Source of the DNA: Lytechinus pictus
Taxonomy: Eukaryota
Assembly (NCBI RefSeq): GCF_037042905.1
Contig: NC_087257.1
Location: 3,968,001-4,032,000 of the forward strand
DNA: 64,000 nucleotides
Direction: 5' to 3'
Both the position numbers and the translations under genes were made by a program. Under the pieces are notes generated by a model. That model worked only from the letters and a program-made list of their open reading frames with translations, had not been told where the DNA came from and ran no database searches. Shown piece by piece: positions 1,749 to 58,072 of the stretch. Position 1 is the first letter of the stretch; each line of letters starts with the position of its first letter.

Positions 1749-4700
1749 TTAACTTATTATGCAACCCTCGTACAATTACTAGTTGTCGCACTCTGAAGAC
1801 AAAATCACCGACACATTTCTCTCTAGTCAATTTCAAGATCAATAATTCAATTTTTAAATCAAGTAGTTCTCCGCGATATAAATAATTCAATCGGCAATAA
1901 CGTAATCAAATCAATCAATGATCCGTATTTCTCTATCTGTATATGGTCTCATCTGTGTCTTTCTCTCTGCGGTTCCATGACATTTCCTCCTACAATTGCT
2001 CCAATGGAAAATCCGCGCGTGAAGCCAAGCATAAATCCAATCTCGAAGACTAACCCCCCCATTCATTACCCTTATGTTATTCTTAAGCAAAAACTCTATT
2101 TTAATCCTTACTCTAACCCTATACCCTCTGATATAATAAGACCAGAGCAATTGTCGCAGGAGCAAATGTCTTGTCACTCTCTCGGTCACTGCCTCTTCTA
2201 TCTATCTCTCTCTCCCACTCTATCACCCTCTCTTTCAAACTCTCTCTCTCTTGTATCGCAATGCTTCGGCGCTCATGGCACTTTCATGGGGAGGGGGTAA
2301 ACTTTCCAGGCACTGTATATTGATAACAGTGACAGCATCAAAACAAAGATACTGACACATACCTATTCGGTCAATGTCAAGAGCAATTTATTTCTTTTGA
2401 CCACGTAGTTTTTCAAAACCATTACAGTTGTACATCGAGAAAACTATATTTGTACCTTTTCATTCAAAATGATTACTTTATATGTATTACATAAACAATA
2501 CAATTTTTAATTTACTGCGAGCAGATAAAATCGTTGACCTACAGTATGCCTGCTTCATTGTATATATTGCAGTTTCAATTTTATTTTTTGATGTTGAAAT
2601 TTTTTTTCTCATTGATATCAACTGGTTCAAGACTGTAAGATAATAAACATATAGCTTTAAAGGATGGTGGTTAGGTAAAAATATAAGTAAAAGGTTAAAA
2701 AGCATTTATAAAGAAAAAAAGGAAATTTCCTATTTCAATATAAGATGTTAGATAAATCGCTAAAATAATCAAGTTCTATTAATGTGGGCAACGGGGAAGA
2801 CAAATGCTATACCTGCATCAACGATTTAAAAATAAGCAGTTTTGTTTTTTTAACCCATTATTTTCGACGGTGGAAAATGAGTCCTCCCCCCCTCCCGAAA
2901 AAAACATTGATGCACAACATGGTACTTGTATGGCCAGGGGCGGATCCAGGATTTTCCAAGGGGGGGGGGGCACATTTCCCAGAGGAAATTTGACAAGCAA
3001 AACAAAAAGAAAAAAGGTTTTCATCCCAAATGTAAGGTCATTTCGTTCACGAAAAAAATGACAAGCCGCCCCCCAAAAAAGAAAGGTCCTCGCTTTCAAG
3101 GGGGGGGGGGGCACACTTGTGTTATAACGACATATTTACTTAAACAAATTTGATTATGCCTCTCAAGGGGGGGGGGGGGAGGGGGGCACGGGCCGCAAGA
3201 TTCGAAAGTCCTGAGTGAGCGAACCTAGTACGTCAAAATTGTTACCTTAAGTTAAAAAAAATAAAAATCCAACTTTTAGGGTTGATTTCGATATGGTTTT
3301 CAGAAAATAACGTCATATCTTACCCTTTTTCATTTTCTTTTCTCCCATTTCCCTTTTTCCCCTTGGTCATGGGACCTTCTTTTACAGGGGCCATGTATTC
3401 CACGCTCCATCTGTACGTCAGTGACGTACTTTAATTAGTACTGAAAATTGTCTTGTTAATGTCAACTTGATGTTGTTTATTAGTTTTTTCTTATTAGCGA
3501 AAAAAAATGAATCATTGAGAACACTCAGAAAGGATATTCAACCATTTCAAACGGAGCCCATCAGTTATGAATAGCTGGTGTAGAACGTTCTTAATCCATC
3601 CCATCTATCCATTAGGTCTGTCATTATTCATTTATTTCATTTTCATTCATGTATTCATATCATATTCCCAAGTTATTGAGTCCTGGATTCATTCATTCAG
3701 TCCTTCATTAATTGAGTGATTCATTCATTCATTCAGCCATCCATTCATTCATATATTCATTGATCAATTCTTTCTTTCACTCGTTCATCTATTCACCCAT
3801 TTACGGTTTTAATCGATTGATTCACTCCCTCCCTTATTCATCAATCCATCCATCCATCCATTCATTCTAGCGGTATGCAGATGTCATTAGTACCTTTGAA
3901 TAATATCACACAACGACACATTGTTTATCATAATTATATAAATTTACTTTTACTACACTAGTTCATGATCAAAAGGATGTCCCATGAAAGTAATCAGTGC
4001 AAATATGGACGTAGTATGGAGGAAAAATCCACATACAGTATATATTAGTACTTAAAAACAACGTTGCTTCTGGGGATAGTACAAAAGCTTGCCCAAGCAT
4101 CTAATAATATAAAAAAAATTACAATATTTGTATAGTGCTTATCACAAAGAAGGTCTCTAAGCACGATGATTAGGACAATGCATGATGCTGATGACTGACA
4201 TATCAAATACTTCTCAAAAAATGATGTGATCAAAATGGCATAAAAGTATGAATATTTTACCCTAGCTTCAGAACAAGAATAACAAGTTATATATTATGAT
4301 TTAATGAAATCTGAAAGGATTTGAAAGTAAGAGTGATAATTTTCTATTTCCCCCATCTAATTACGCCTTTCAATTACAATAAAATATCTTTAAAAAAAAA
4401 TATCAATGCTTCATCAAAATTGTATGTGGTAAAAGTCAGATATTCAATAATAGTAACAAAGGAAAAAGACTGGGGTGAACATTTCCAAGAGCTCTAGATT
4501 TCTGAAAGATAAGAAACCTTTTTTTCTAACTATTGCATTCACTCACCATGACAGAGAAGAATAAATATATAAAAAGTGTATTTGTTGCATAAAAGTATTT
4601 AAAATTCCTCTGAACAATAAACATAAATCTGAAAATTCAAATATTTTGACATAAAAAGGTACTAAAAAAACTCCTGTATATAACTTGGGATTAGAGTCAG

Positions 4701-5709: not shown

Positions 5710-8700
5710 TTTGGTAAGAACAGGAAGTCATCAGGTACAGGACCAAGGAACATTTCACTGAAAATAAAGAGAAGAGATCCCCACATAATTTTAAGTAATA
5801 ATAGCAATGCACAATGAAATATACTCCTAAAATTTTGAGGAAAGGCAATCAGGAACCTTTCATTTACTTCAATTGAAAGAATGATATAACACAAACATAA
5901 ATAACAAAATTAATTAAGATCATCAAGCATTTTTTAAAAGGATAACACCTCCTCTGACTTTGAAGTAAAACTCATCAGACCCGCATGGATCCAATGGGGG
6001 CAGTTAGCACGGATGATTGATGTTTTGATATGATCCTGACCCCCCAAAGTGTGGAAGTCTATTAGAGACTTACCCACGGATAGATTCAAGGACAAGCACA
6101 TTCATCACCAAATCATTGGACAATCCTGCCACATCCTTGAAGAGTTAATACCTGATTTTGACCAAGATGGCACAGTTAGGACTGACCATCAAAGTTTTAA
6201 AAACCATCCAAACCAACAGAGTATTGGTCTTCGTTAGCACTAGCCATCAATGTTTCCAGATCATTCTGACCAACAAGACAAGGAGGTCTTTGAACAAGTG
6301 TGACTTCATGATCAAGCTAAACATCAACAAAACATAGGACAATTGCTCTTTAGCCTTTGATGTAGAGCGTTGTCTTACTTGAGGGAAGATTGGATGTTCA
6401 AGGACACCCAAAATCCCATTGTCATATTATAGGCCAATCCTTCATCTGGGGCCTGTTGCAGAAAGAGTTGCGTTCAAACACAATACGGGTGCTTCAATGG
6501 CTGAAAATCAAGTTGCGCAAGATTTTTTGAGTTGCGTTTGATTGCAACTCTTTCTGCAACGGGCCCCAGAGCTTTGAATTTGATCTAATCTCACCTGATC
6601 TTGACCCAGTCGGCGCAGTTAGCACTCGCCATCAGGGTTTCCAGGTCATTCCGACCGACAAAGTAAGGAGGTCTTTCGTTGATCTTCTGAGGTGGTCTTT
6701 CCAAGACTCCCACCGGGATGTATCGGTGGAGGAACGAGAGCCACTCTAACAGGAATCTCCTTGTCTTCCGCACTCCCTGCATCAAGGAAATCACAAATTC
6801 AATCTTAAAGCTTTGTTCGAGTTCTGGTATAGAGATCTAATTTTGACACGAAATGGTTGGAAGCAATCCAAAAGTACTCTGCAATGCCTATTTTGAATAA
6901 CAAAGTTTAATTAAAATAATTTAGGCTTGCTCCCATTTTTTTTCTGTCATTTTTATGTTCATCATTTGCTCATTATTCTACTATCATACATTTACCTGAA
7001 AAATTGTCAGGCAGATTTCATTTATTTTTCTTCACGATTCTGTTGATTTTTGTTCAATTCCGACAGCATTGTATTTTCTATTGTTACCAATACAAAAGTA
7101 TTGTCCTAACAACTTCAACAGAGACAGCGGGATCGACATCCCCGACTTCTGGATGCGAACCATCCGACAGCACAATACCCCCTTACCTGGCAGTGCACGC
7201 CGACCCGTTTTTTGAAAGAACGCATCTTTCTCACTAGATGCACGATTGATTCAGCTAAGACGGAATACGAAACTTTAAAAGCCGATATCAAAGAGACTAT
7301 GCAAGCCCAACATAGTACAGACATTCTGAAGGTTAATGAAAATATCTACGCAGATGTTTTCGCTAAATGCAAGAAAAGGCAACAGGCTAAATTTGAAAAG
7401 TTGATACAACCCAAATCGAAGAAGGTCACCGCCTCATTAGCGAATGAGGATAAATGGGTTGTTAACCTATCCTCGAGACAGATCACCTCCACCGAGGAAC
7501 AATTGCTTAAGAAAGGCCTCGCCTTTGCCGTGTCGCCCCAAAAATTGCCCATTACCGAGATTGTAGCTAAGGTTGAAACCGCGGTCAAGTATATTGATCC
7601 AGTTTCGGCCGATGCCGCACGAAAAGATGTAGATTCCATTCTACAGAGAGCACGTCCTCCGAAACCGAATACCACAAGAGAGATGCGTGATGCTCTTAAG
7701 ACACTCAAGAATGATGATAGCATCACAATCCTCCCTGCGGATAAGGGTAGTGCCACAATCATTTTAGATAGTACCGCCTACGAAGACAAAATGACCGAGC
7801 TTCTGAGCTCTGGTCCGTATAAAATGCTAAAGAAAGACCCCACAGATCGAATGTGTCGCAAACTGACCAGTACGTTACTGGCACTAAAGAAAGACAAAGT
7901 TCTAGATGAGGCTACATACAAAAAGATAAAGCCCACACAGAAACAGCCACCTAGAGTTTACGGGTTGCCCAAAATACACAAACCCGGGATACCTCTCAGA
8001 CCAATAGTATCATGCATAGGTTCATTTGCCTATAACCTATCAAAGTACCTGGCGGACATCCTGTCCCCTCTCACTAACTGCTCAGAACACACGGTTTCCA
8101 ACTCCAGTGAATTCGCTGAATTCACATCAGAGCAGACAGTCAACGAACAGGAATCCATGATCTCTTTTGATGTAGTCTCCCTCTTCACTAACATACCGAT
8201 AGAGGGCGCATGCAGTACGGCCCTGCAACGCATGCAATCCGACCCCACATTATCAGAACGTACCACACTTATGCCCGAACAAATAGCCGAACTCCTGGAG
8301 TTCGTCCTCAGATCCACATATTTTCTGTACAGAGGCTCTTTCTATGAGCAAACAGAAGGAGCAGCAATGGGTAGCCCAGTCTCAGCGGTTGTGGCTAACC
8401 TATATATGGAAGGTTTTGAACAGAACGCTTTGCTCAAGTGTCCTTCCACATGCCACCCTCGGGTGTGGAAGAGATACGTCGATGACACTTTCATAATCGT
8501 AAATAGATCCGAAACAGACAGCCTACTCTCATACATGAATAGCCAGCAACCGTCCATCCAGTTCACTCTGGAGACTGAGCAAGGAGGGAAATTAGCATTC
8601 CTTGACACGCTAGTCCAAAGACACGAGGGCGGGAAACTCTCCACCTCTGTCTACCGCAAGCCCACTCATACAGACCAATACATACCATATGATTCTCATC

Positions 8701-11700
8701 ACGACAAATCGGTCAAGAAGGGTCTTGTTAAGTGCCTGTTCGACAGAGCAGCACGTATCATAACTCACCCACCTGAACTCCCGAAAGAAAGAGCACACAT
8801 ACGTGGCGCCTTGTACAGCAACGGCTACCCACGCCGTTTTATCAAGAACACTTTCAAGAAAAAACAACCACCAAGGGATCAGAAGGTTTTCAAGACTTGC
8901 ACAGTCTTGCCATACATAGATGGCCTTTCACAACAACTTAAACGCCGATTAGAAGGTCACGGTATTCGAACGGTTTTCCGCTCGGACACCACCTTACACA
9001 AACAGCTTGTACACCCCAAAGACCCTATCCCTGATCACAGACGTGATGGCGTAGTATACAACATTCCTTGCCAGGGATGTGACGGGTCTTACATCGGAGA
9101 AACAGCCCGACCGATAGTTGAACGCATTTCTGAACACAAGCGCGATGTTCGGTTACAGCGAACCGACACATCCGCGGTGGCAGAACATGTTTGGGAGAAG
9201 CAACACCACCCAGATTGGGAGGGTGTACATTGCATTGCCAAAGAGAGACATTGGTATACACGCAGGATTAAGGAGGCTATTAATATACGTCTTTGTCCTA
9301 ACAACTTCAACAGAGACAGCGGGATCGACATCCCCGACTTCTGGATGCGAACCATCCGACAGCACAATACCCCCTTACCTGGCAGTGCACGCCGACCCGA
9401 TCGTTCCCGGCCCCGAACGAGGGACCGCTCAGCTAGTCAGCCCCCGCCCACGGGAAACTAGCGAGCCCGCCAATTTTGTCTAATTTGCATATTGCCTACC
9501 CACGGCGTATTTGCATATACCCCCGGCTTATTTGCATATACGGATTACCGGCCGCACCGCATACCGACGCAACGGATCAATGCCCACCTATTGTTCTCGC
9601 GTTCGTGCGTACGGTCCTGGAGATTAGTATAAATAGAGTACGTTATCAGATAATTTTCGTCACTTGATAAAGAGTTGCAGCGGCACTCGAAAGCTCGTGA
9701 ACTTGTAAGCTAGTGAACACTTTTTGCGAGAGTGATCACGAATTTCCTAGAAAGCCAGTGAACACTTTTTGCGAGAGTGATCACGAATTTCCTTGTTGAC
9801 CATAGTAGATTGCGAGACAAATGAATACCCTCTAGCGATTATTTCAAATCTGCAATAATGAACCTATTTAGTACAAAAGTTTATCTTTCAGGGGGTGAGC
9901 AAATCAAAACAGGTGGTTTGGTAATGTTTTTAATCCTTCTGATCATGTTGAAATTAATTTTGTAGTAATTTCTTTTTCTATTCAAGAAGAAATCATGTGT
10001 CTTCTGTACTCCCTCCATCAAGGAAATCACAAACTCAATCTGAAGCGTTTAAAATTTTTATTTGGTGATGTTTTCTCAAACTTCTCTTCATGCTAAATTA
10101 ACTGCTATAGCTGGCCAGCTGTGTTCTGAAGCAGTATTTCTATGATCAGATATTTAGACATATATTTTAACATTAGATTTGTACACACAAGGAAATGACT
10201 GTAATCACTTAGGCCTGATGGAAAATGCACAAAGATAACAAGATGGTACATCAATAAAAGCAACATTCATGAATAATAAACATTCATTTTCATCCCATTA
10301 GATTCTACAAGTTTGGTTAAAGAGATGGTCCGGCCTGAAAGTATTTATAGCTTAATAAAAAGAGTAGAATTCACTGAGCAAAATGCCGAAAATTTCATCA
10401 AAATCGGATAACAAATAACAAAGTTATTGAATTTTAAATTATAGCAATATTTTGTGAAAACAGTCGTCATGAATATTCATTAGGTGGGCTGATGATGTCA
10501 CATCCCCATTTGTTCTTTTGTATTTTATTATATGAAATTAGGTTTATTCAAATTTTTTCCTCCAAGAACAAGAAAAATTGGATTGACAACTGATTTAGTG
10601 CATTAGATATTTATTGAAATAAGGGGAAAAAAAAGAATTTTATGTAATAACATAAGAAAACGGAAAGTGGGGATGTGACCTCATCAGCCCATCTAATGAA
10701 TATTCATAATGACTGTTTTCACAAAATATTGCTAAACTTTAAACTTCAATAACTTTATTATTTGTTATACGATTTTGATGAAATTTTCGGCATTTTGCTC
10801 TTTGAATTCTACTCTATGTATTAAGATATAAATATTTTCAGCCCGGACCATCCCTTTAATACACAATGCCTGGATGGAATCAAACTGACTATTCAGTGAC
10901 TTACCGGAGTGTCTGAACCCCAATGTAAGAGCCCTAGGTTTACATAATCCTGTAGTATGTCAAAGCGCTCACTGGATGAGATATCCCAGTGTCTATAAAA
11001 TGTAGAGAGGAGAGGAAGAATGATAGGTTAAAGGGATATGGGTTTTGAGAAAAATGCCCCAAAATAATGGTGTCTTTCAGATTTGAAGTAGTGATATATG
11101 ATGAATATCAAATTCAAAAGATTCTATGAAATGATGATGTCATAACAATGATGATGATGGTGAATAATAATAATAATAATATGCAACATTTATATAGCGC
11201 TTAATACAAATGTTTCTAAAGCGCTGCATACTATTACCACAGCTTTCGCACAGCTATCCTGATCGGACGCTCCAGCATTCAAGGAATTCCTTCCTACCCA
11301 TGGAATTGATGATGATCTTATCAGGTAACTATTTAACACCTGGGTGGAGAGTAGCAAAAATGCGAATTGACTTTTTTTTCACCGGATGCCGGTGCCTCTG
11401 TGGGATTCGAAAACACATTCCTCAGATCATGCGGCAAATGTCAGAACTACTACACTACAGCACTTTCAAAAGATGACCCATATCAACTTTGAAGGTTGAA
11501 CAGCTTCATAGTATAGTAAACACACAACTTTTAGAAAATCTGAGTTGTACCTCTGTTCTTTGATCTCAGTGAATATCCATGGTTTGATGAGGGCACCTCT
11601 GGCTATCATCTGGCCAGCCGATCCACTCCTCTCACGGAAGAAATTTGCATCTTCGAACGAAAGGATGTCTCCGTTTCCTATGTGGAACAAAGAGTATACT

Positions 11701-14700
11701 AATAATACATATCATAGAGTTTTTCTATAGTCATACATGAAACATGTCTTTGATCTTAGTGAAACTCTTAAAAGAATCTCATCATAAATCATTAAAAAAT
11801 AGACGATACAAAAAAATATAAAGAATGTATGCAAAGGAAGCAACAAAGGTCAAAGAACTATCGAGGCTTCTCCCAGAGCAACATGGTTGCAAATTAGATA
11901 TCAAAATAACAAAACAATCACAAATATGTACATGAACATGGAACCCCTCCCCTAACCCCCGAATGGTTGAGGGAATAAGTAAGATTTACAGACACACGGT
12001 ACCTTTGGAACAGTTCAATTCATAAGATAGTGATGTGGATCCTTGTTAAACAGGGGTGTGAGTGGTCACAAATAAAAAGATCTGAAAAAAGCTGAAGAGT
12101 GTTGAAAAAGTGTGAAATAGAAAGAGCTCCCATACTTTTTGTACAGAGGAAGCCAAAAATAAGCTGAAAATCAAAACAAAAAATCTGAAATCAGCTTAAA
12201 ATCTGAACTCTCACACCCCTGGTTAAACCATTTTCATCCCAAAACCACGACCGGTCAGTAGGCACCAGTCATTCGCACATTTTCCTGTTAGCTGGAAAAT
12301 TTATGTTGTCACCAGTTTTGTCAAAGGTATTTGATTTAATCCTTATCAGTGGTCATTTTCCCGATAATTGGTCAGTAAGCCTCATAAAGTCTCTTTACAA
12401 AAGTGGGTCAGTTTGCGATCCCTCAAATTATCGAGGGATATCCCTCTCAAGTTGTCTTGGAAAGTTTTTTGCTCAGTTCTAAACCGTCGCTTAGTATCAT
12501 TTCTAGAAGAATATAGTCTCAATACAGCCAATCAGATTGCTTTTAGAGCAGGTTATAGAACGTCAGACCACATGTTCGTTCTAAAAACTATTCTTGATAA
12601 ATATATAAGATGTAAAATAAATGATAACTATAATAAATTATATGTATGCTTTGTAGACTTAAGAAAGGCTTTTGACAACGTTTGGAGGGATGGTCTCTGG
12701 TACAAACTACTAGAACATGGAATTGGTGGAAATTTCTTAAGAGTCATCCGTGACATGTATTCAAAATGTAATGTATCGATCAAATTAGACGAAGGTGTTA
12801 CCCCATATTTTCATACTAATATTGGAGTAAAACAGGGTTGCGTAATTAGTCCAACTTTATTTAATTTATTTGTAAATGACATAACTAATATATTTGATAC
12901 ATCAGTAAGCGATCCAGTAACACTTTTTGATAAAGAACTAAATTGTATAATGTATGCTGATGATCTTGTTATTGTGTCGAAATCCCCTAAAGGTATGCAA
13001 CACTGTTTAGATAAATTCACCGCATACTGTAAATCCTGGATGTTAAACATAAATGTATCTAAGACTAAGATTATGGTGTGCTCAAAATCAGGGAGATCGA
13101 ACGAAGGGGTTTCATTTGAAATTAATGGAGAAACACTATGCACTGTTAGGGAAATGAAATATCTTGGTATTGTTTTCGCAAATAATGGATCACTTAAAGT
13201 GGCCGCAAGGGATTTAGCTGATAAAGCGAGAAGAGCATTGTTCAAATTGTACAAATCTTTTGGTTCCTATACTCCTAGCACTAAAACCTTGTTGCATCTT
13301 TTCGATGCAACGATACAACCGATATTACTTTATGGATCTGAAATTTGGGGTACTAATGTTGTAGACATAGAAAAAAATCTACAATTAATGGATGGGAAAA
13401 CAGGGCTTTATTTTAAACACAAATCTGAAAAGGTGCACATTCAATTTTGTAAATATATTCTTGGGGTAAACCGCAAATGCAGTAATTTAGCAGCGACAGC
13501 TGAAATCGGTAGATATCCAAAAGTCATTCAAATTGCCATAAATATACTGAAATATTGGATTCGAATACATAATATGGACGAAGATAGTTTGGTTTACAAA
13601 GCTTTTGTAGAAAATGTAAGTCTATTGAATAACGGAACCAAATGCTGGCTTAAGACAATTCAGGATATTTTTAACATACTAGATATTTGTTGGAAAAATG
13701 ACACCCCCATACTTGATCCAGAAAATATACCAATTTCCCAAAAAGAATTTATTACGATATGCAAAACATCATTGGAAAGAAGATTTGACGAACAATTTGA
13801 ATTGGATTTATTTAACGACAGGGACACTAGGGAAGGAAATAAACTAAGAACTTTTAGGCAATTCAAATTCAATATAAGACAAGAAAATTATTTATATTCA
13901 ATACACAATGTCAATTTGAGAAAAAATATAACCAAGCTCCGACTGAGCGCTCATAATCTACCAATAGAAACAGGAAGGTACAAAAGACCGGAGAAGATAC
14001 CACCTAACCTGAGATTTTGTGAAGATTGTAATTTGAATTTTGTCGGGGATGAGTTTCACATTATAATGAAATGTAACAAATATAAAGATTTGCGTAAAGA
14101 TTTTTTTGAAAAGATAATTACCTTCAATATTAGGTTTACTGAAATGGAGTGCCAGGAAAAATGTATCTACATCATGAAATTGGAAACTGAAGCCTTGATT
14201 AAATTGTTTTGTTCTTTTATCCAAAACATAATTGCTATTAGGGGTGATTTCTAAGTACTACAAATATCAACCGGTAAACACTTTGAAGTAATATATTCGC
14301 AATATTTTTACACAATGAATTTACATGTAATGCCATTCTTCTCATTCTTCCTCTCTTTCCCGCTCTCTCCATTTTCGAACTTCTTCCCTCTTTATTTCCC
14401 TTTCCTCTCTCACTTTCTTTATGTTTTCTTTATCTTTTCTTGGATATCAGTCTCTATATTCATTGTCAAAATATCTATCCGAATGATTCCTATGTTAATT
14501 GTGTATATTTGTATATAATTTACAAGTTGTTTCTTTTTTCTTTTTTTTCTTTTTGACGAAATACTATTTTGTTTTTGTTTATTTGCTTATATTCCTTGCA
14601 TTGTATATTTGTCTTGTATCATTTTGTACTTCTTGTTATGAACAAAATACTGGCAATTGCCAGTGAAGTTCTAATAAATTCAATTCAATTCATGACTGGT

Positions 14701-38819: not shown

Positions 38820-41758
38820 GGGGGGGGGGGGGTCATAAGACTTCTCCACGATACAATTATAGCAATTTCCTAGATGAATGTAACAGTTTTGTAACACCGG
38901 GCATGTTGGCTCGGTGGTAGAGCGTCCGCCTCATGGACGGGAGGTCGTGGGTTCGATCCCCGGCCAAGTCATACCAAAGACTTATAAAAATGGGACCTTC
39001 TGCCTTCTTGCTTGGTGCTCAGCATTTAGATTTGAGAAGGGTAATAATAACATATTATGTTATGCAGGGCCCGCTGGAAGAGCAGTCTTATGATTGAAGT
39101 GGCTACCCTGGGTAAATAAACCGTTATTATTATTATTATTATTACAATAACTATATTTACATTTAATAAAGCTATATGATTGAAGCTATATGATTGAAGT
39201 GGCTACCCTGGGTAAATAAACCGTTATTATTATTATTATTATTATTAGAATAACTATATTTACATTTGATAAAGCTATATAGCCATGTGAACCTTATTTC
39301 ATGCTTGGTAAAACATATTTATTGATATCCATGAAGGTGTATAAGTCAGTGTAGAAGGCCATAGAGGATATTCAAGTCCATCGGCCGATGACGGGGAACG
39401 GTCGACTATTCTGCTTGCGCATACTCACTGTCAGGGACTTCAGACTCCATATTCAGACAACTTTCCTCGAGTGAAGGGCTTGCATTTTCGCTAAAAAAAT
39501 ATCTAAAAAAGAGGTAGAGAATGAAAGAGGTCTGGGCCTTTGTTTCTAAAGGCACTTATCAAAAAGTAAAAGGAACACAGCCCCCCCCCCCCCACAACAA
39601 CAAAAAAACAATACCATGAGAAAGAAGCAGAAGATGAGATTGCCGAGAGTCGAAATTAAGAAAAAAATGTAAAATTGCCTTAACTCGATTACGCAGATTC
39701 CACAGTTCTATGGAATTAAAAAAAAATGAAATAGCGCATGATTATATGTATAATCCTTAACAACACGATATTTCTATATATTTTAATAATAACACCATCA
39801 CGTTTTCATTCTTCACTCGTAATTACAGGTCGGGAGGCTAAACACAAGCGAACAATTTTTCAAATGCAATGAAGGAGATCCCGCCAGAAAATCAATGGTA
39901 ATTTTGTTTATAACCAGCCCTTGCCTGATAATCTTTGAATTAATCAATATTTAGGCTACGTTAACATGGTTAAAGCTTAAACAGAACATTAAGTCATTCT
40001 TTGCCGAGAATTAGCTTTCGTTTTCCCCTTTCATGTTGTCGTGATTATAACATATTCCTTTATTAATGCCATGTACAACTAGTAACCCGAAATTAGACCC
40101 TATTTTAGCCAATCTGGAATGAAATTATTGGAAATGGTTTTTCAATTGATTTGAGTAGGTATGGGTGTCAACATTAACCAACAAACCCAGACTTTAGTGA
40201 TCTATGATGTTATTACGAATTGCTCATATTTCGTCATGTATAATTATTGATTATATAGTAATTGCAATTTTCATCACCATGCATGCGTCACTTCGAAGTT
40301 TAAGAAATATTTTCTTGTTCTTACTAATATTTTTGTTTCTGCTTAAAATTGTCCGGAAATGTATTTGAGAATTCGGCAACCCATGTTTGGAACCTAGTCG
40401 GAGCGCAAATGTCATCATTACCATGTGCATGGAGAGGACCTTAATTCGTTGGTCCTTTGGTACTGGTCTATGATTCTTTATTACCAGTCAGGTAAAAAAT
40501 CTTCCCCACTGTAAAACATTTTTAAATACTTCATTTTCAGGATGATGAGGGTAATCATCGCCATGTGGGAGTAACGTGTGGGTGTTCGAGCCACGATGTG
40601 ATGAGGGTGAAGGAACTCGAGGCTGACATCGAGACTCTAGCAGAACAACGGAAACTACAGGACGCCCAGATTGAACAACTCTCTGAGCTGGTAAGTATTT
40701 GATGCAGTAGGTGACCAGATCAGTGATGGTAGTGGTGGGGGTGGTGGTAATGATGATGGTGACGATGATGAGGATGTGGAGATGACGGTGATGATGATGA
40801 TGGTGGTGATGACAGTAATCACATGGCGAACAGATGAAAGAAAAGAGAGAAAAGGAAAAGTTTTAAGGGGGAAATTATGATGTCAAAACCTACCACAATT
40901 TTGGATTTTCGTAATGAAAATGTAATTTTTTTTCCTTGCTCGCATCTTTTTATTTATTTTTCGCGGTATGCCATATCGAGCCCCCTCAAAATTTTTGGCT
41001 CATTATGTCACTGACGGTAATAATGATGATGGGGCTGGTGGTGGTGATGGCGGTTGCTGTTTGTGATGACGATGATGATGATGATGGTAATTATTATGAT
41101 GATGGTGATGGTGGTAATGATAATGACCGATGGTGATGATTTTGATATACTAAATAACGATAATGGCGTTGTTGATGATTACGAATTATGGTCATGATCA
41201 TGATAATAATTTTGATACTTATGACGATAATGATGATGATAATAGTGATACACAATAATAAAATCTTTATAATGCATGCCGGTATTAGTATTGTTATTGT
41301 AATAGGTGCTATTTTGCTAGTTTGATTAAAAACATGATTATTTCAAACATACATATAACATTCAATTCATTCAAATGAAAAAAAAACATCATTGATAAAA
41401 GACATGATAAATAACAAACGTTGTCTTTCTATAAATCTCTTATTTTCTAAAATATAAAGCCTGATTTAAAAACATAAACATCAGCGAAACGTTGCATCAT
41501 TGTATGATTAAGATTTATACAATTTGTTTTTCTTTACCTACAATGGACTCTTGCCACGTGGTATTTAGTACCGCACTATACATTTATAGAAAAGACTCTC
41601 TTATTTTGCTTAATCTTTCCAACCTTGTTCCATTTTACTCTCCATAGCTTCAAAGATCAAACGACGAAAAGCACGAATTGATGAACCATCTCACAGAAGT
41701 ACAACAAGAAAAGCGAAATCTCCAATCCGATTTTGATTCCATTCTTGCTTGCGAATAA
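29591..41758 (+). CDS. Uncharacterised coiled-coil protein, 13 coding exons, ~955 aa
   Basis: Phase-consistent GT-AG exons: 29591-29866, 30558-30634, 31316-31470, 32559-32764, 33276-33455, 34080-34264, 34823-35105, 35449-36246, 36822-37046, 38602-38754, 39829-39897, 40541-40690, 41648-41758 (TAA). Total 2868 nt with no internal stop. E/K/L/Q-rich heptad-like segments such as ELENQIDLLNVINQQLTEY and VKELEADIETLAEQRKLQDAQIEQLSELLQ. No family recognised. Confidence 0.8.
31492..31891 (+). mobile_element. L2-clade LINE 3' fragment
   Basis: Decayed ORF2 C-terminus (PTRSLRSADQALL...WGDRAF...KLWNSLP); L2-type tail AAGCGC...GCGCTATACAAG(CAT)n; 8-bp TSD CACCCTAT at 31484-31491 / 31892-31899. Confidence 0.8.
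33767..34034. mobile_element. Harbinger-like MITE (inverted, shorter copy at ~48247-48432)
   Basis: TIR CGCCCTTTCACA / TGTGAAAAGGCCC; internal sequence shared in reverse complement with 48247-48432. Confidence 0.6.
37272..38195. mobile_element. piggyBac-like MITE (TTAA, CCCT...AGGG) containing a nested Harbinger-type MITE at 37371-37513
   Basis: TTAA-CCCTAA...TTAGGG-TTAA. Inner TIR TACCGTGTTTACACTTAATCGGCA / TGCCGATTAAGTGTAAGCACGGTA with TAA TSD. Confidence 0.8.
38898..39143 (+). mobile_element. tRNA-derived SINE (Meta-domain-like core), with its 3' end tandemly re-duplicated at ~39189-39280
   Basis: A box TGGCTCGGTGG, B box GGTTCGATCCC, core GTCATACCAAAGACTTATAAAAATGG...GCTTGGTGCTCAGCAT, AATAAA and (TTA)n tail. 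Confidence 0.8.
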
Positions 41759-58000: not shown

Positions 58001-58072
58001 GTCTCTGTGGTCTAGTGGTTAAGGCACCGGCGTTCAAAGCTGGGGGCCCGGATTTGATTCCCGGCAGATACA
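58001..58072 (+). pseudogene. tRNA-like cloverleaf with UCA anticodon and short variable loop (probably repeat-associated)
   Basis: Acceptor GTCTCTG/CAGATAC (1 mismatch); A box TGGTCTAGTGG; anticodon arm CCGGC-GTTCAAA-GCTGG; T arm CCGGA-TTTGATT-CCCGG (decayed); followed by T6. Confidence 0.55.

What the first reader, a model, noticed from the sequence alone, without database searches (positions are those of the whole stretch)
9660..9700. Variant minimal hammerhead ribozyme in the Penelope-like element pseudo-LTR
Seen: UCAC-UUGAUAA-A-[GAG(U)UGC-AGCG-GCACUC]-GAAA-GC-UC-GUGA, which is complete type I hammerhead topology with stem I closed by UCAC/GUGA. The canonical CUGAnGA is replaced by UUGAUAA, a double change that preserves the 3-8 tertiary pair (U3-A8). 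There is one extra A before stem II. Stem III is reduced to the palindrome AGCU, which cannot close as a monomer hairpin. Established: PLE pseudo-LTRs carry minimal hammerheads thought to cleave as dimers through palindromic stem III. Inference: this is a self-cleaving module (cut after C9696) that canonical-core searches would miss. This insertion has only one copy because the 5' pLTR is truncated, so it would need a partner RNA in trans.
Basis: partly seen in the sequence, partly recalled or inferred. Interest (0 to 1): 0.8.

Follow-up and report, generated by a model that had tools for sequence, protein, structure and literature searches.

The report
Penelope retrotransposon hammerhead with swapped core pair
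This 41-base motif is the small hammerhead ribozyme module of a young sea-urchin Penelope-like retrotransposon, with one core base pair changed from C-G to U-A; it is real and conserved, but this variant has been published for such elements and cutting in the animal is not shown.

Summary
It lies about 200 nt after the stop codon of a 5'-truncated Penelope-like element (PLE) ORF with RT and GIY-YIG domains, 7212-9461.

A strict min-hammerhead descriptor finds only this site in the window, against about 0.005 expected by chance.

Eight canonical-core relatives from other PLE lineages (53-73% protein identity) have the same module at the same place. Shared parts are a TATA box, stem I, the CUGAnGA core, an extra A, a bulged helix II, GAAA, a 2-nt palindrome, U-C17 and stem I.
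- 9 of 15 pairs show compensatory changes.
- The 3-8 pair is C-G in eight sequences and U-A in the two Lytechinus sequences.

The U3-A8 family has at least 525 copies in this genome. No copy combines this helix II with a C3-G8 core.

The novelty claim fails. Cervera and De la Peña (2014) already describe PLE min-hammerheads with U3-A8, the extra nucleotide, bulged helix II and palindromic helix III.

Rfam also misses the canonical relatives, so the minimal architecture explains the miss, not the core change.

RNA-seq shows no molecule ends at 9696/9697. All genomic copies run through the site. Cleavage in vivo is therefore unproven.

Verdict: a new member of a known kind. An earlier follow-up in this scan reached a similar verdict on another PLE of this genome.

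The parts
9660..9700 (+). Complete minimal type I hammerhead module (U3-A8 core variant) of the PLE pLTR
   Evidence: Sequence. It is the only descriptor hit in the window, with 0.005 expected by chance. It is homologous to canonical modules in relatives, with covariation.
9660..9663 (+). Stem I, 5' strand (UCAC), pairs with 9697-9700
   Evidence: Stem I covaries among relatives: AU/GC 5:5 at the second pair.
9664..9670 (+). Core positions 3-9, UUGAUAA. U3 is 9664 and A8 is 9669, replacing C3 and G8.
   Evidence: The 3-8 pair is CG in 8 and UA in 2 of 10 related sequences, and never unpaired.
9671..9671 (+). Unpaired A between A9 and G10.1
   Evidence: Invariant in all 10 related lineages and in the other PLE families of this genome. 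A published trait of PLE min-hammerheads.
9672..9688 (+). Helix II: 4 bp, bulged U9676, 2 bp, loop AGCG. Opens with G10.1-C11.1.
   Evidence: Three of its pairs show compensatory changes among relatives, and the bulge position is conserved.
9689..9691 (+). Core G12 A13 A14
   Evidence: Invariant in all relatives.
9692..9695 (+). A15.1 G15.2 C16.2 U16.1, the palindrome AGCU. It can form helix III only with a second copy.
   Evidence: The 15.2-16.2 pair is CG in 8 and GC in 2 sequences, so the palindrome is kept.
9696..9696 (+). C17, the predicted cleavage site (cut between 9696 and 9697)
   Evidence: Position follows from the hammerhead numbering. C is invariant in relatives. No RNA ends were seen here.
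9697..9700 (+). Stem I, 3' strand (GUGA)
9628..9635 (+). TATA box (TATAAATA), 36 nt upstream of U3. It predicts a transcription start at about 9656-9661, at the 5' edge of the hammerhead.
   Evidence: A TATA-like box lies 28-36 nt upstream of position 3 in all 10 related lineages. RNA-seq depth rises from about 9640. The start site itself is inferred.
9483..9537 (+). Three ATTTGCAT octamers (9483-9490, 9509-9516, 9530-9537), the likely enhancer part of the pLTR promoter
   Evidence: Sequence and repeat family D6. Function is inferred.
9702..9791 (+). Two tandem 45-nt repeats in the 5' UTR, between the hammerhead and the GAGACAA box
   Evidence: D5. Reads that skip or add 45 nt show copy-number variation. 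The 73% and more distant relatives lack the repeats.
9814..9820 (+). Conserved GAGACAA box, 20-55 nt upstream of the insertion 3' ends
   Evidence: Present in 9 of 10 related lineages (GTGACAT in the tenth) at a comparable place. A role as RT recognition or initiation region is inferred by analogy with PMC11167929.
9858..9860 (+). ATG that opens the element's ORF in full-length units. It lies inside the 3' tail of the insertion.
   Evidence: A tandem locus (L076 plus L075) shows the ORF starting at this ATG.
9841..9873 (+). The 32-nt tail between the two alternative insertion 3' ends. The short class ends at 9841 and the long class at 9873. The window copy is the long class.
   Evidence: Comparison of about 60 copy ends. 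Loose ends of reads lie at 9841/9842 and 9873.
7212..9461 (+). 5'-truncated PLE ORF (749 codons open) with RT and C-terminal GIY-YIG endonuclease
   Evidence: Its homologues are PLE proteins of sea urchins, corals and others.
7101..7207 (+). Exact duplicate of 9293-9399 joined to internal ORF sequence. This is the 5' edge of the insertion, probably a template switch. It contains no hammerhead.

Best explanation
The motif is the hammerhead module of a very young, high-copy Penelope-like element family of a Lytechinus sea urchin.

Shown here:
- It descends from the canonical minimal type I hammerhead that related PLE lineages carry at the same place.
- In the Lytechinus lineage the tertiary C3-G8 pair was replaced by U3-A8. 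All other core nucleotides, the unpaired A, the bulged helix II and a palindromic helix III were kept.

Inferred:
- A monomer cannot form helix III. Any cleavage after C9696 therefore needs a second copy, from the other pLTR of a tandem transcript or from another RNA.
- The two copies would form a domain-swapped double hammerhead: a shared AGCU:AGCU helix III with stems I formed in trans.
- Cleavage is probably also helped by the element's own protein.
- It is likely slow and partial. Every inserted copy was reverse-transcribed from RNA that was intact across the site.
- In this single-hammerhead insertion the module is inert unless a partner RNA is present.
For: - Exact motif, and the only descriptor hit in the window, with 0.005 expected by chance.
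- It lies in the PLE tail after the RT and GIY-YIG ORF.
- Other PLE families of the same genome carry stemI-CUGAnGA-A-helixII-GAAA-GC-UH-stemI.
- Eight relatives at 53-73% protein identity carry a canonical module of identical layout, 0-200 nt after their ORFs.
- On the 10-sequence alignment 91.3% of cells pair and 9 of 15 pairs have changes on both sides. None of 500 shuffles reaches this, and slid controls fall to 15-50% paired.
- The 3-8 pair is CG in 8 and UA in 2 sequences, with no mismatched state.
- The family has 525 copies within 3 mismatches. Among copies with this helix II, 0 are C3-G8, 1 is C3-A8 and 7 are U3-G8.
- The L. variegatus 93% family has the same U3-A8 core.
- Natural U3-A8 PLE hammerheads, and dimer cleavage of min-hammerheads, are published (PMC4209133).
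- The Anolis PLE hammerhead needs the 3-8 pair and cleaves only with protein present (PMC11167929).
Against: - Three raw-read RNA-seq runs show no place where many molecules begin or end, and no step in depth at 9696/9697.
- All genomic copies extend 145 or 177 nt beyond the cleavage site, so productive templates were uncleaved.
- The S. purpuratus 73% relative has A at core position 4 (CAGAUGA) in both arms of the one locus read. The core may therefore drift in this clade.
- The computed double-hammerhead energy (-17.1 kcal/mol) is no better than two monomers.
- Published PLE min-hammerheads cleave poorly in vitro.
- Hammerhead-free PLE clades proliferate well (PMC8557442).
- U3-A8 activity in this context was not measured.
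Confidence: 0.6

Rival explanations
1. It is a true hammerhead descendant that no longer cleaves. On this view the fold (stems I and II plus core) is kept for another role at the 5' end of the element's RNA and near its 3' end. Possible roles are binding of the RT/EN protein, marking the template, or 5' UTR structure. Alternatively it is simply carried along by a successful family.
For: - No RNA ends at the predicted site.
- Templates of all copies were uncleaved.
- The S. purpuratus relative has a U4A core change.
- Catalytic mutants of the hammerhead did not affect insertion by the Anolis PLE in vitro, and no reads ended at its site (PMC11167929).
- Naiad and Chlamys PLEs thrive without hammerheads (PMC8557442).
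Against: - Two substitutions that exactly restore a Watson-Crick 3-8 pair are not expected under loss of catalytic constraint.
- Every other catalytic nucleotide (U4, G5, A6, A9, G12, A13, A14, C17) is intact in at least 525 copies and in the sister species.
- The palindrome at 15.2-16.2 was kept while changing from CG to GC. That only matters for dimer helix III.
Confidence: 0.33
2. It is a DNA-level core-promoter or initiator-region element. On this view the conserved block just downstream of the TATA box acts on transcription initiation, and the RNA fold is incidental.
For: TATA-to-motif spacing is conserved in all 10 lineages. The predicted start site falls at the 5' edge of the motif. RNA depth rises there.
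Against: Conservation is of base pairing, not of sequence. 9 of 15 pairs have compensatory double changes, and stems I and II differ in sequence between lineages. The invariant letters are exactly the hammerhead catalytic nucleotides.
Confidence: 0.04
3. It is a chance resemblance to a hammerhead in AT-rich repeat DNA.
Against: 0.005 expected hits per window under the same relaxed descriptor. The reversed-pattern control gave 0 against 525 genomic copies. The module sits at the homologous position and covaries across relatives from at least five source organisms or samples.
Confidence: 0.01

Closest known systems
Minimal hammerheads (min-HHR) of metazoan Penelope-like elements, including the U3-A8 variant found from Schistosoma mansoni Cercyon PLEs (Cervera and De la Peña 2014, PMC4209133)
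   Same: - Type I topology.
- Short stem I (4 bp) and long helix II (6 bp).
- Unpaired nucleotide between A9 and 10.1, and a G10.1-C11.1 pair.
- No real helix III, only a palindromic 15.2-16.2.
- Location in the pLTR.
- Frequent single or inverted-pair copies.
- U3-A8 in place of C3-G8.
   Different: - The host is a sea urchin. I found no paper on echinoderm PLE hammerheads in the searchable library.
- Here the U3-A8 state is fixed in one nearly invariant, very young family of at least 525 copies.
- Its canonical-core sister lineages are available, so the switch can be placed on a lineage.
Drosophila virilis Penelope hammerhead variant (same paper)
   Same: [quoted passage not shown]
   Different: The D. 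virilis motif keeps C3-G8, has a 2-bp helix I and abuts an intron end. Here helix I is 4 bp, and no spliced reads were seen in 9700-9860.
Poseidon PLE of Anolis carolinensis (PAc) hammerhead (PMC11167929)
   Same: A pLTR hammerhead near the ORF start. Two adjacent internal RT initiation sites give a tail signature. No RNA-seq ends at the cleavage site.
   Different: - In PAc the ORF starts inside the hammerhead. Here the ATG is 162 nt downstream of C17.
- PAc has C3-G8.
- Protein-assisted cleavage was shown for PAc and is only inferred here.
Dimer-dependent hammerheads of newt satellite 2 and avocado sunblotch viroid (Forster et al. 1988, cited in PMC4209133 and PMC6765202), and the roughly 150,000 small PLE-associated variants of Lünse, Weinberg and Breaker 2017 (cited in PMC6765202; the paper itself is not held)
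   Same: An unstable or absent helix III, replaced by an intermolecular helix in a double hammerhead.
   Different: Those have a canonical core, as far as I can tell from the citing texts. I could not read the Lünse paper to check whether it lists U3-A8 cases.

Membership tests
Hammerhead ribozyme (type I) | Three-way junction with stems I and II flanking the two core strands, and the open ends at stem I | tested here: met
   Stems I (4 bp) and II (6 bp plus bulge) are the minimum-energy fold of the 41-mer. Both are supported by compensatory changes in relatives.
Hammerhead ribozyme (type I) | Conserved core nucleotides C3 U4 G5 A6 N7 G8 A9, G12 A13 A14, and H17 | tested here: inconclusive
   U4, G5, A6, A9, G12, A13, A14 and C17 are present. 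C3 and G8 are replaced by U and A, so the letter consensus is not met but the 3-8 Watson-Crick pair is. Relatives show only CG or UA. Natural U3-A8 cases are published.
Hammerhead ribozyme (type I) | Helix III closing the junction | tested here: not met
   Only AGCU with no loop lies between A14 and C17, so no monomer helix III is possible. This is the defining departure of the min-HHR subclass, where helix III forms between two copies.
Hammerhead ribozyme (type I) | Site-specific self-cleavage 3' of position 17 | tested here: inconclusive
   RNA-seq of 3 runs lists no place where molecules begin or end, and no step in depth at 9696/9697. Ordinary libraries and multi-copy mapping cannot exclude partial cleavage. 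No biochemical test is possible with these tools.
PLE minimal hammerhead (min-HHR, Cervera and De la Peña 2014) | Located in the pLTR of a Penelope-like element (RT plus GIY-YIG ORF) | tested here: met
   The ORF at 7212-9461 has RVT_1 and GIY-YIG. The motif lies 199 nt after its stop. In a tandem locus it recurs once per 3,265-bp unit.
PLE minimal hammerhead (min-HHR, Cervera and De la Peña 2014) | One nucleotide between A9 and 10.1 | tested here: met
   A9671. It is invariant in 10 related lineages and in other PLE families of the genome.
PLE minimal hammerhead (min-HHR, Cervera and De la Peña 2014) | G10.1-C11.1 closing pair of an enlarged helix II | tested here: met
   G9672-C9688. The pair is GC in 10 of 10 sequences.
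PLE minimal hammerhead (min-HHR, Cervera and De la Peña 2014) | Palindromic 15.2-16.2 (and loop 3 if present), allowing a dimer helix III | tested here: met
   GC here and CG in 8 relatives. The sequence is always palindromic within A-NN-U.
PLE minimal hammerhead (min-HHR, Cervera and De la Peña 2014) | Families of copies with covariation and compensatory changes | tested here: met
   9 of 15 pairs have double changes and 0 of 500 shuffles reach the observed scores. Within the young family itself there is almost no variation. The two variants seen are a loop change (9681 C>U) and G-C to G-U (9686 C>U).
Rfam Hammerhead_1 (RF00163) and other Rfam hammerhead models | Score at or above the family's gathering threshold | tested here: not met
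   No hammerhead hit even at E up to 10. Canonical-core relatives also give none. The best genome-wide RF00163 hits score 25.7 bits, below the 34-bit cut-off. The models do not cover helix-III-less forms.

The most novel reading that the evidence does not exclude
The conserved TATA box, hammerhead and GAGACAA box layout puts the ribozyme at the first roughly 40 nt of the element's own capped transcript. The same module recurs about 150-180 nt before the RT initiation sites at the 3' end. The two copies on one unit-plus RNA could pair through AGCU:AGCU, so that one reaction both removes the cap and detaches the tail. This would be a built-in switch between mRNA or template and a dead or circular RNA. 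On this reading the U3-A8 swap in Lytechinus weakens that switch, which is why this family reached at least 525 copies while canonical-core sisters of the 4-nt-loop helix II type that searched have about 20.
Probability: 0.1. Interest if true: 0.65.

Novelty: new member of a known kind. Interest (0 to 1): 0.3.

Why it matters
This is a clean natural experiment on the hammerhead's 3-8 tertiary pair. Canonical C-G sisters and a U-A derivative exist in closely related elements, and the derivative family is very young and abundant. That makes it a convenient system for three questions:
- whether PLE hammerheads need to cleave at all;
- whether the 3-8 pair tunes the rate;
- where PLE transcripts start relative to the ribozyme.

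For annotation it is a reminder that the standard covariance models tested here (Rfam release 15) miss min-hammerheads as a class. As a discovery it adds little, because the variant, its extra nucleotide, its bulge and its dimer logic have been in the literature since 2014.

Tried and rejected
- Rfam at gathering threshold and at E up to 10 found nothing relevant at the site. The minus-strand Afu_199 hit (E 0.97) is noise.
- RF00163 over the whole genome gave only two sub-threshold hits.
- A within-family covariation test was abandoned. The copies are 99-100% identical and mostly dead on arrival, so their mutations say little about selection.
- My first estimate of the element's 3' end (about 9840) was wrong for the window copy. 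An indel at 9846 broke the ungapped extension. One search shows two real end classes, at 9841 and 9873.
- A search for other U3-A8 families with a different helix II gave only 7 hits. About 3 look like decayed copies of one other family, so U3-A8 is not widespread outside this family here.
The unit structure comes from two overlapping loci already held.
- Three look-ups failed. P0020 had no contig on record. P0055 was not sent because the service was busy. Przybilski and Hammann 2007 and Lünse et al. 2017 are not held. Statements on mutational tolerance of the 3-8 pair therefore rest on PMC11167929, PMC3884650 and my own recollection.
The only joints are 45-nt repeat-number variants and inverted-copy junctions.
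- Dimer thermodynamics are uninformative. The double hammerhead is about isoenergetic with two monomers.
Full report
**What is there.** In hammerhead numbering:
- stem I is 9660-9663 with 9697-9700;
- core positions 3-9 are 9664-9670;
- an unpaired A is 9671;
- helix II is 9672-9688, 6 bp with U9676 bulged, opening with G10.1-C11.1;
- G12-A14 are 9689-9691;
- A15.1-G15.2-C16.2-U16.1 are 9692-9695;
- C17 is 9696.

RNAfold of the 41-mer gives stems I and II as its minimum-energy fold.

I wrote an explicit min-hammerhead descriptor that accepts either a C3-G8 or a U3-A8 core. It hits only this site in both strands of the 64 kb window. It hits 0.005 times per window in 200 composition-matched random sequences.

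[quoted passage not shown] Its homologues are Penelope-like element (PLE) proteins of sea urchins, corals and other marine animals.

The best named hit is 98% identical and labelled Lytechinus pictus. It lies on a contig of 57,468,504 bases, the length of contig C5 of this assembly. The genome is therefore very probably L. pictus.

The insertion runs from about 7101 to 9873.
- Its 5' edge is a 107-nt exact duplicate of 9293-9399, fused to internal ORF sequence.

A tandem locus elsewhere (L076 plus L075) shows the unit structure. The unit is 3,265 bp with one hammerhead per unit. The ORF's ATG corresponds to window 9858-9860, 162 nt downstream of C17.

Upstream of the motif lie three ATTTGCAT octamers (9483-9537) and a TATA box (9628-9635). 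The TATA box predicts a start at about 9656-9661, the 5' edge of stem I.

**Abundance and uniformity.** The 41-mer occurs 525 times in the genome within three mismatches, against 0 for the reversed-pattern control. At least 100 of these copies are exact. Flanking pLTR sequence is 99-100% identical among 40 scored copies.

Among copies with this helix II, none has C3-G8, one has C3-A8 and seven have U3-G8. The U-A state is therefore the family's own state, not decay of individual copies.

**Homology and covariation.** Other PLE families in the same genome carry stemI-CUGAnGA-A-helixII-GAAA-GC-U-H-stemI downstream of their GIY-YIG domains. The extra A and the GC palindrome are house features of PLE hammerheads here.

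I then fetched DNA for protein relatives.
- **L. variegatus family, 93% protein identity:** the identical U3-A8 module, with one loop change.
- **S. purpuratus family, 73%:** CAGAUGA, that is C3-G8 but A at position 4.
- **Metagenomic 73% relative, Diadema antillarum (54%), a second L. variegatus family (62%), and four marine metagenome or assembly contigs (53-60%):** all have canonical CUGAnGA.

All share the unpaired A, a helix II of 4 bp plus one bulged base plus GC(A), GAAA, a 2-nt palindrome, U-C17 and a 2-5 bp stem I.

On the 10-sequence alignment A1 the hammerhead pairing scheme performs as follows:
- 91.3% of cells are paired.
- 9 of 15 pairs have changes on both sides.
- None of 500 shuffles reaches the observed percentage paired, the pairs or cells changed on both sides, or the covariation score (the count of further pair types was reached by 89).
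- Controls with the 3' partner slid by 1-3 columns fall to 15-50% paired.
- The 3-8 pair is CG eight times and UA twice, never mismatched.
- The 15.2-16.2 pair is CG eight times and GC twice, always palindromic.

The two UA sequences are the two Lytechinus sequences, so this is one evolutionary event.

**How it would work.** Between A14 and C17 there are only four bases, AGCU, so a monomer cannot close helix III.

Two copies can pair AGCU with AGCU. For the junction geometry to hold, stems I must then also form in trans. This gives a domain-swapped double hammerhead in which each RNA supplies the enzyme strand for the other's C17. That is the published model for min-hammerheads (PMC4209133, PMC6765202).

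The computed energy of that dimer (-17.1 kcal/mol) is about equal to two monomers. This fits the weak in vitro activity reported for this class. It also fits the protein-assisted cleavage reported for the Anolis PLE, where C3G and G8C singles kill activity and the double mutant partly restores it (PMC11167929).

That the U-A pair supports catalysis here is inference. It rests on the published natural U3-A8 variants and on the known role of the 3-8 pair.

**Evidence on cleavage in vivo.** Three raw-read RNA-seq runs were laid on 9400-9999. They carry the same coded species label as part of the DNA holders.
- Depth per strand column is 0-21 upstream of 9640.
- It rises steadily from about 27 at 9640-9659 to about 115-180 at 9800-9819.
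- No position qualifies as a place where many molecules begin or end.
- There is no step at 9696/9697.

The libraries look unstranded, and reads come from hundreds of copies. Many of those copies sit inside other transcripts. This therefore only says that cleaved ends are a minority.

Independently, about 60 copy ends fall into two classes, ending at 9841 or at 9873 (loose ends). Every inserted copy was therefore reverse-transcribed from RNA that was continuous across the cleavage site. Cleavage at the 3'-proximal hammerhead cannot be part of making a productive template.

Hammerhead-free PLE clades proliferate well (PMC8557442). The module's contribution to transposition remains an open question in the field.

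**Comparison with what is known.** Cervera and De la Peña 2014 describe metazoan PLE min-hammerheads with these features:
- a 4-5 bp helix I and a 7-8 bp helix II;
- an unpaired nucleotide 5' of helix II;
- a conserved G10.1-C11.1 pair;
- a palindromic 15.2-16.2;
- a mid-helix-II bulge in Drosophila virilis;
- explicitly, a U3-A8 covariation found from Schistosoma Cercyon elements, with about 1,300 hits.

The claim that canonical-core searches would miss this motif is true in a trivial sense. The cause is wrongly assigned, though. Rfam finds no hammerhead at this site. It also finds none in three relatives with perfect CUGAnGA cores, because its models expect a helix III.

I found no paper on echinoderm PLE hammerheads in the library. 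This is best filed as a new member of a known kind. An earlier follow-up in this scan reached the same kind of verdict for another PLE family of this genome.

**What is mildly new here.**
- The C-G to U-A switch can be placed on one lineage, with canonical sisters in hand.
- The U-A family is by far the most abundant of its structural clade in this genome: 525 copies against about 23 for canonical-core members with the same helix II design.
- The order TATA box (28-36 nt upstream of position 3), hammerhead, GAGACAA box is conserved: the TATA box in all ten lineages, the GAGACAA box in nine, with GTGACAT in the tenth. This places the ribozyme at the very 5' end of the element's own transcript.

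These points suggest, but do not show, that the hammerhead acts on the capped 5' end as well as near the 3' tail.

**Verdict.** The interpretation as a PLE minimal hammerhead is supported by homology and covariation. The novelty is not supported, and catalytic activity is unproven. Interest is low to moderate.

Noticed in passing
window 9841 and 9873; loci L002-L030, L063-L078: Insertions of this family end at one of two sites 32 nt apart (...CTAGCGATTA| or ...AACCTATTTAGTA(T)|). In head-to-head inverted pairs one arm has the long end and the other the short end. This matches the 30-40 bp PLE tail and the two adjacent RT initiation sites described for the Anolis PLE.
   Followed up: partly
window 9814-9820; L079-L088 downstream of each hammerhead: A GAGACAA box (usually YGYGAGACAAAYGAA) lies 26-117 nt after C17 in 9 of 10 related PLE lineages, just upstream of the insertion 3' ends. 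It is a candidate RT recognition or initiation signal.
   Followed up: partly
L080:7715-7721 and its inverted twin at L080:5731-5773 (S. purpuratus relative): The 73% relative has CAGAUGA, with A at the normally invariant U4, in both arms of an inverted pair. The rest of the module is intact. Only one locus was read, so it is unclear whether this is the family state.
   Followed up: no
window 9702-9791: Two tandem 45-nt repeats lie between the hammerhead and the GAGACAA box. They are absent from the 73% and more distant relatives. RNA reads that skip or add exactly 45 nt indicate copies with one or three repeats.
   Followed up: partly
window 9649 and 9659 (reads): Many RNA reads match from 9650 or 9660 onward but carry a different sequence upstream. 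One is a roughly 70% similar promoter-region variant. The other is an unrelated sequence with near-perfect agreement between reads. Other subfamilies or a specific expressed locus therefore share the pLTR from the start of the hammerhead onward.
   Followed up: no
L076 plus L075 (G000:C10:10017630-10024287), merged positions 3236-3628: One unit of the tandem array carries about 393 extra bases inside the ORF relative to the window copy and ends its reading frame there. I did not determine whether it is an insertion or something else.
   Followed up: no
window 12368-14254 (+): A second, unrelated reverse-transcriptase ORF (628 codons, RVT_1 E 1e-34) lies 2.5 kb downstream of the PLE. It probably belongs to another class of retroelement.
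   Followed up: no
window 38900-38971 and 58001-58072 (+): Two tRNA-like sequences pass the Rfam gathering score (30.5 and 46.8 bits). The weaker one may be a tRNA-derived repeat.
   Followed up: no
window 6762-6808 and 9998-10044: A 47-nt direct repeat (89% identical) flanks the PLE insertion at some distance. It is too long and too diverged for a target-site duplication, and probably reflects copies of another repeat.
   Followed up: no
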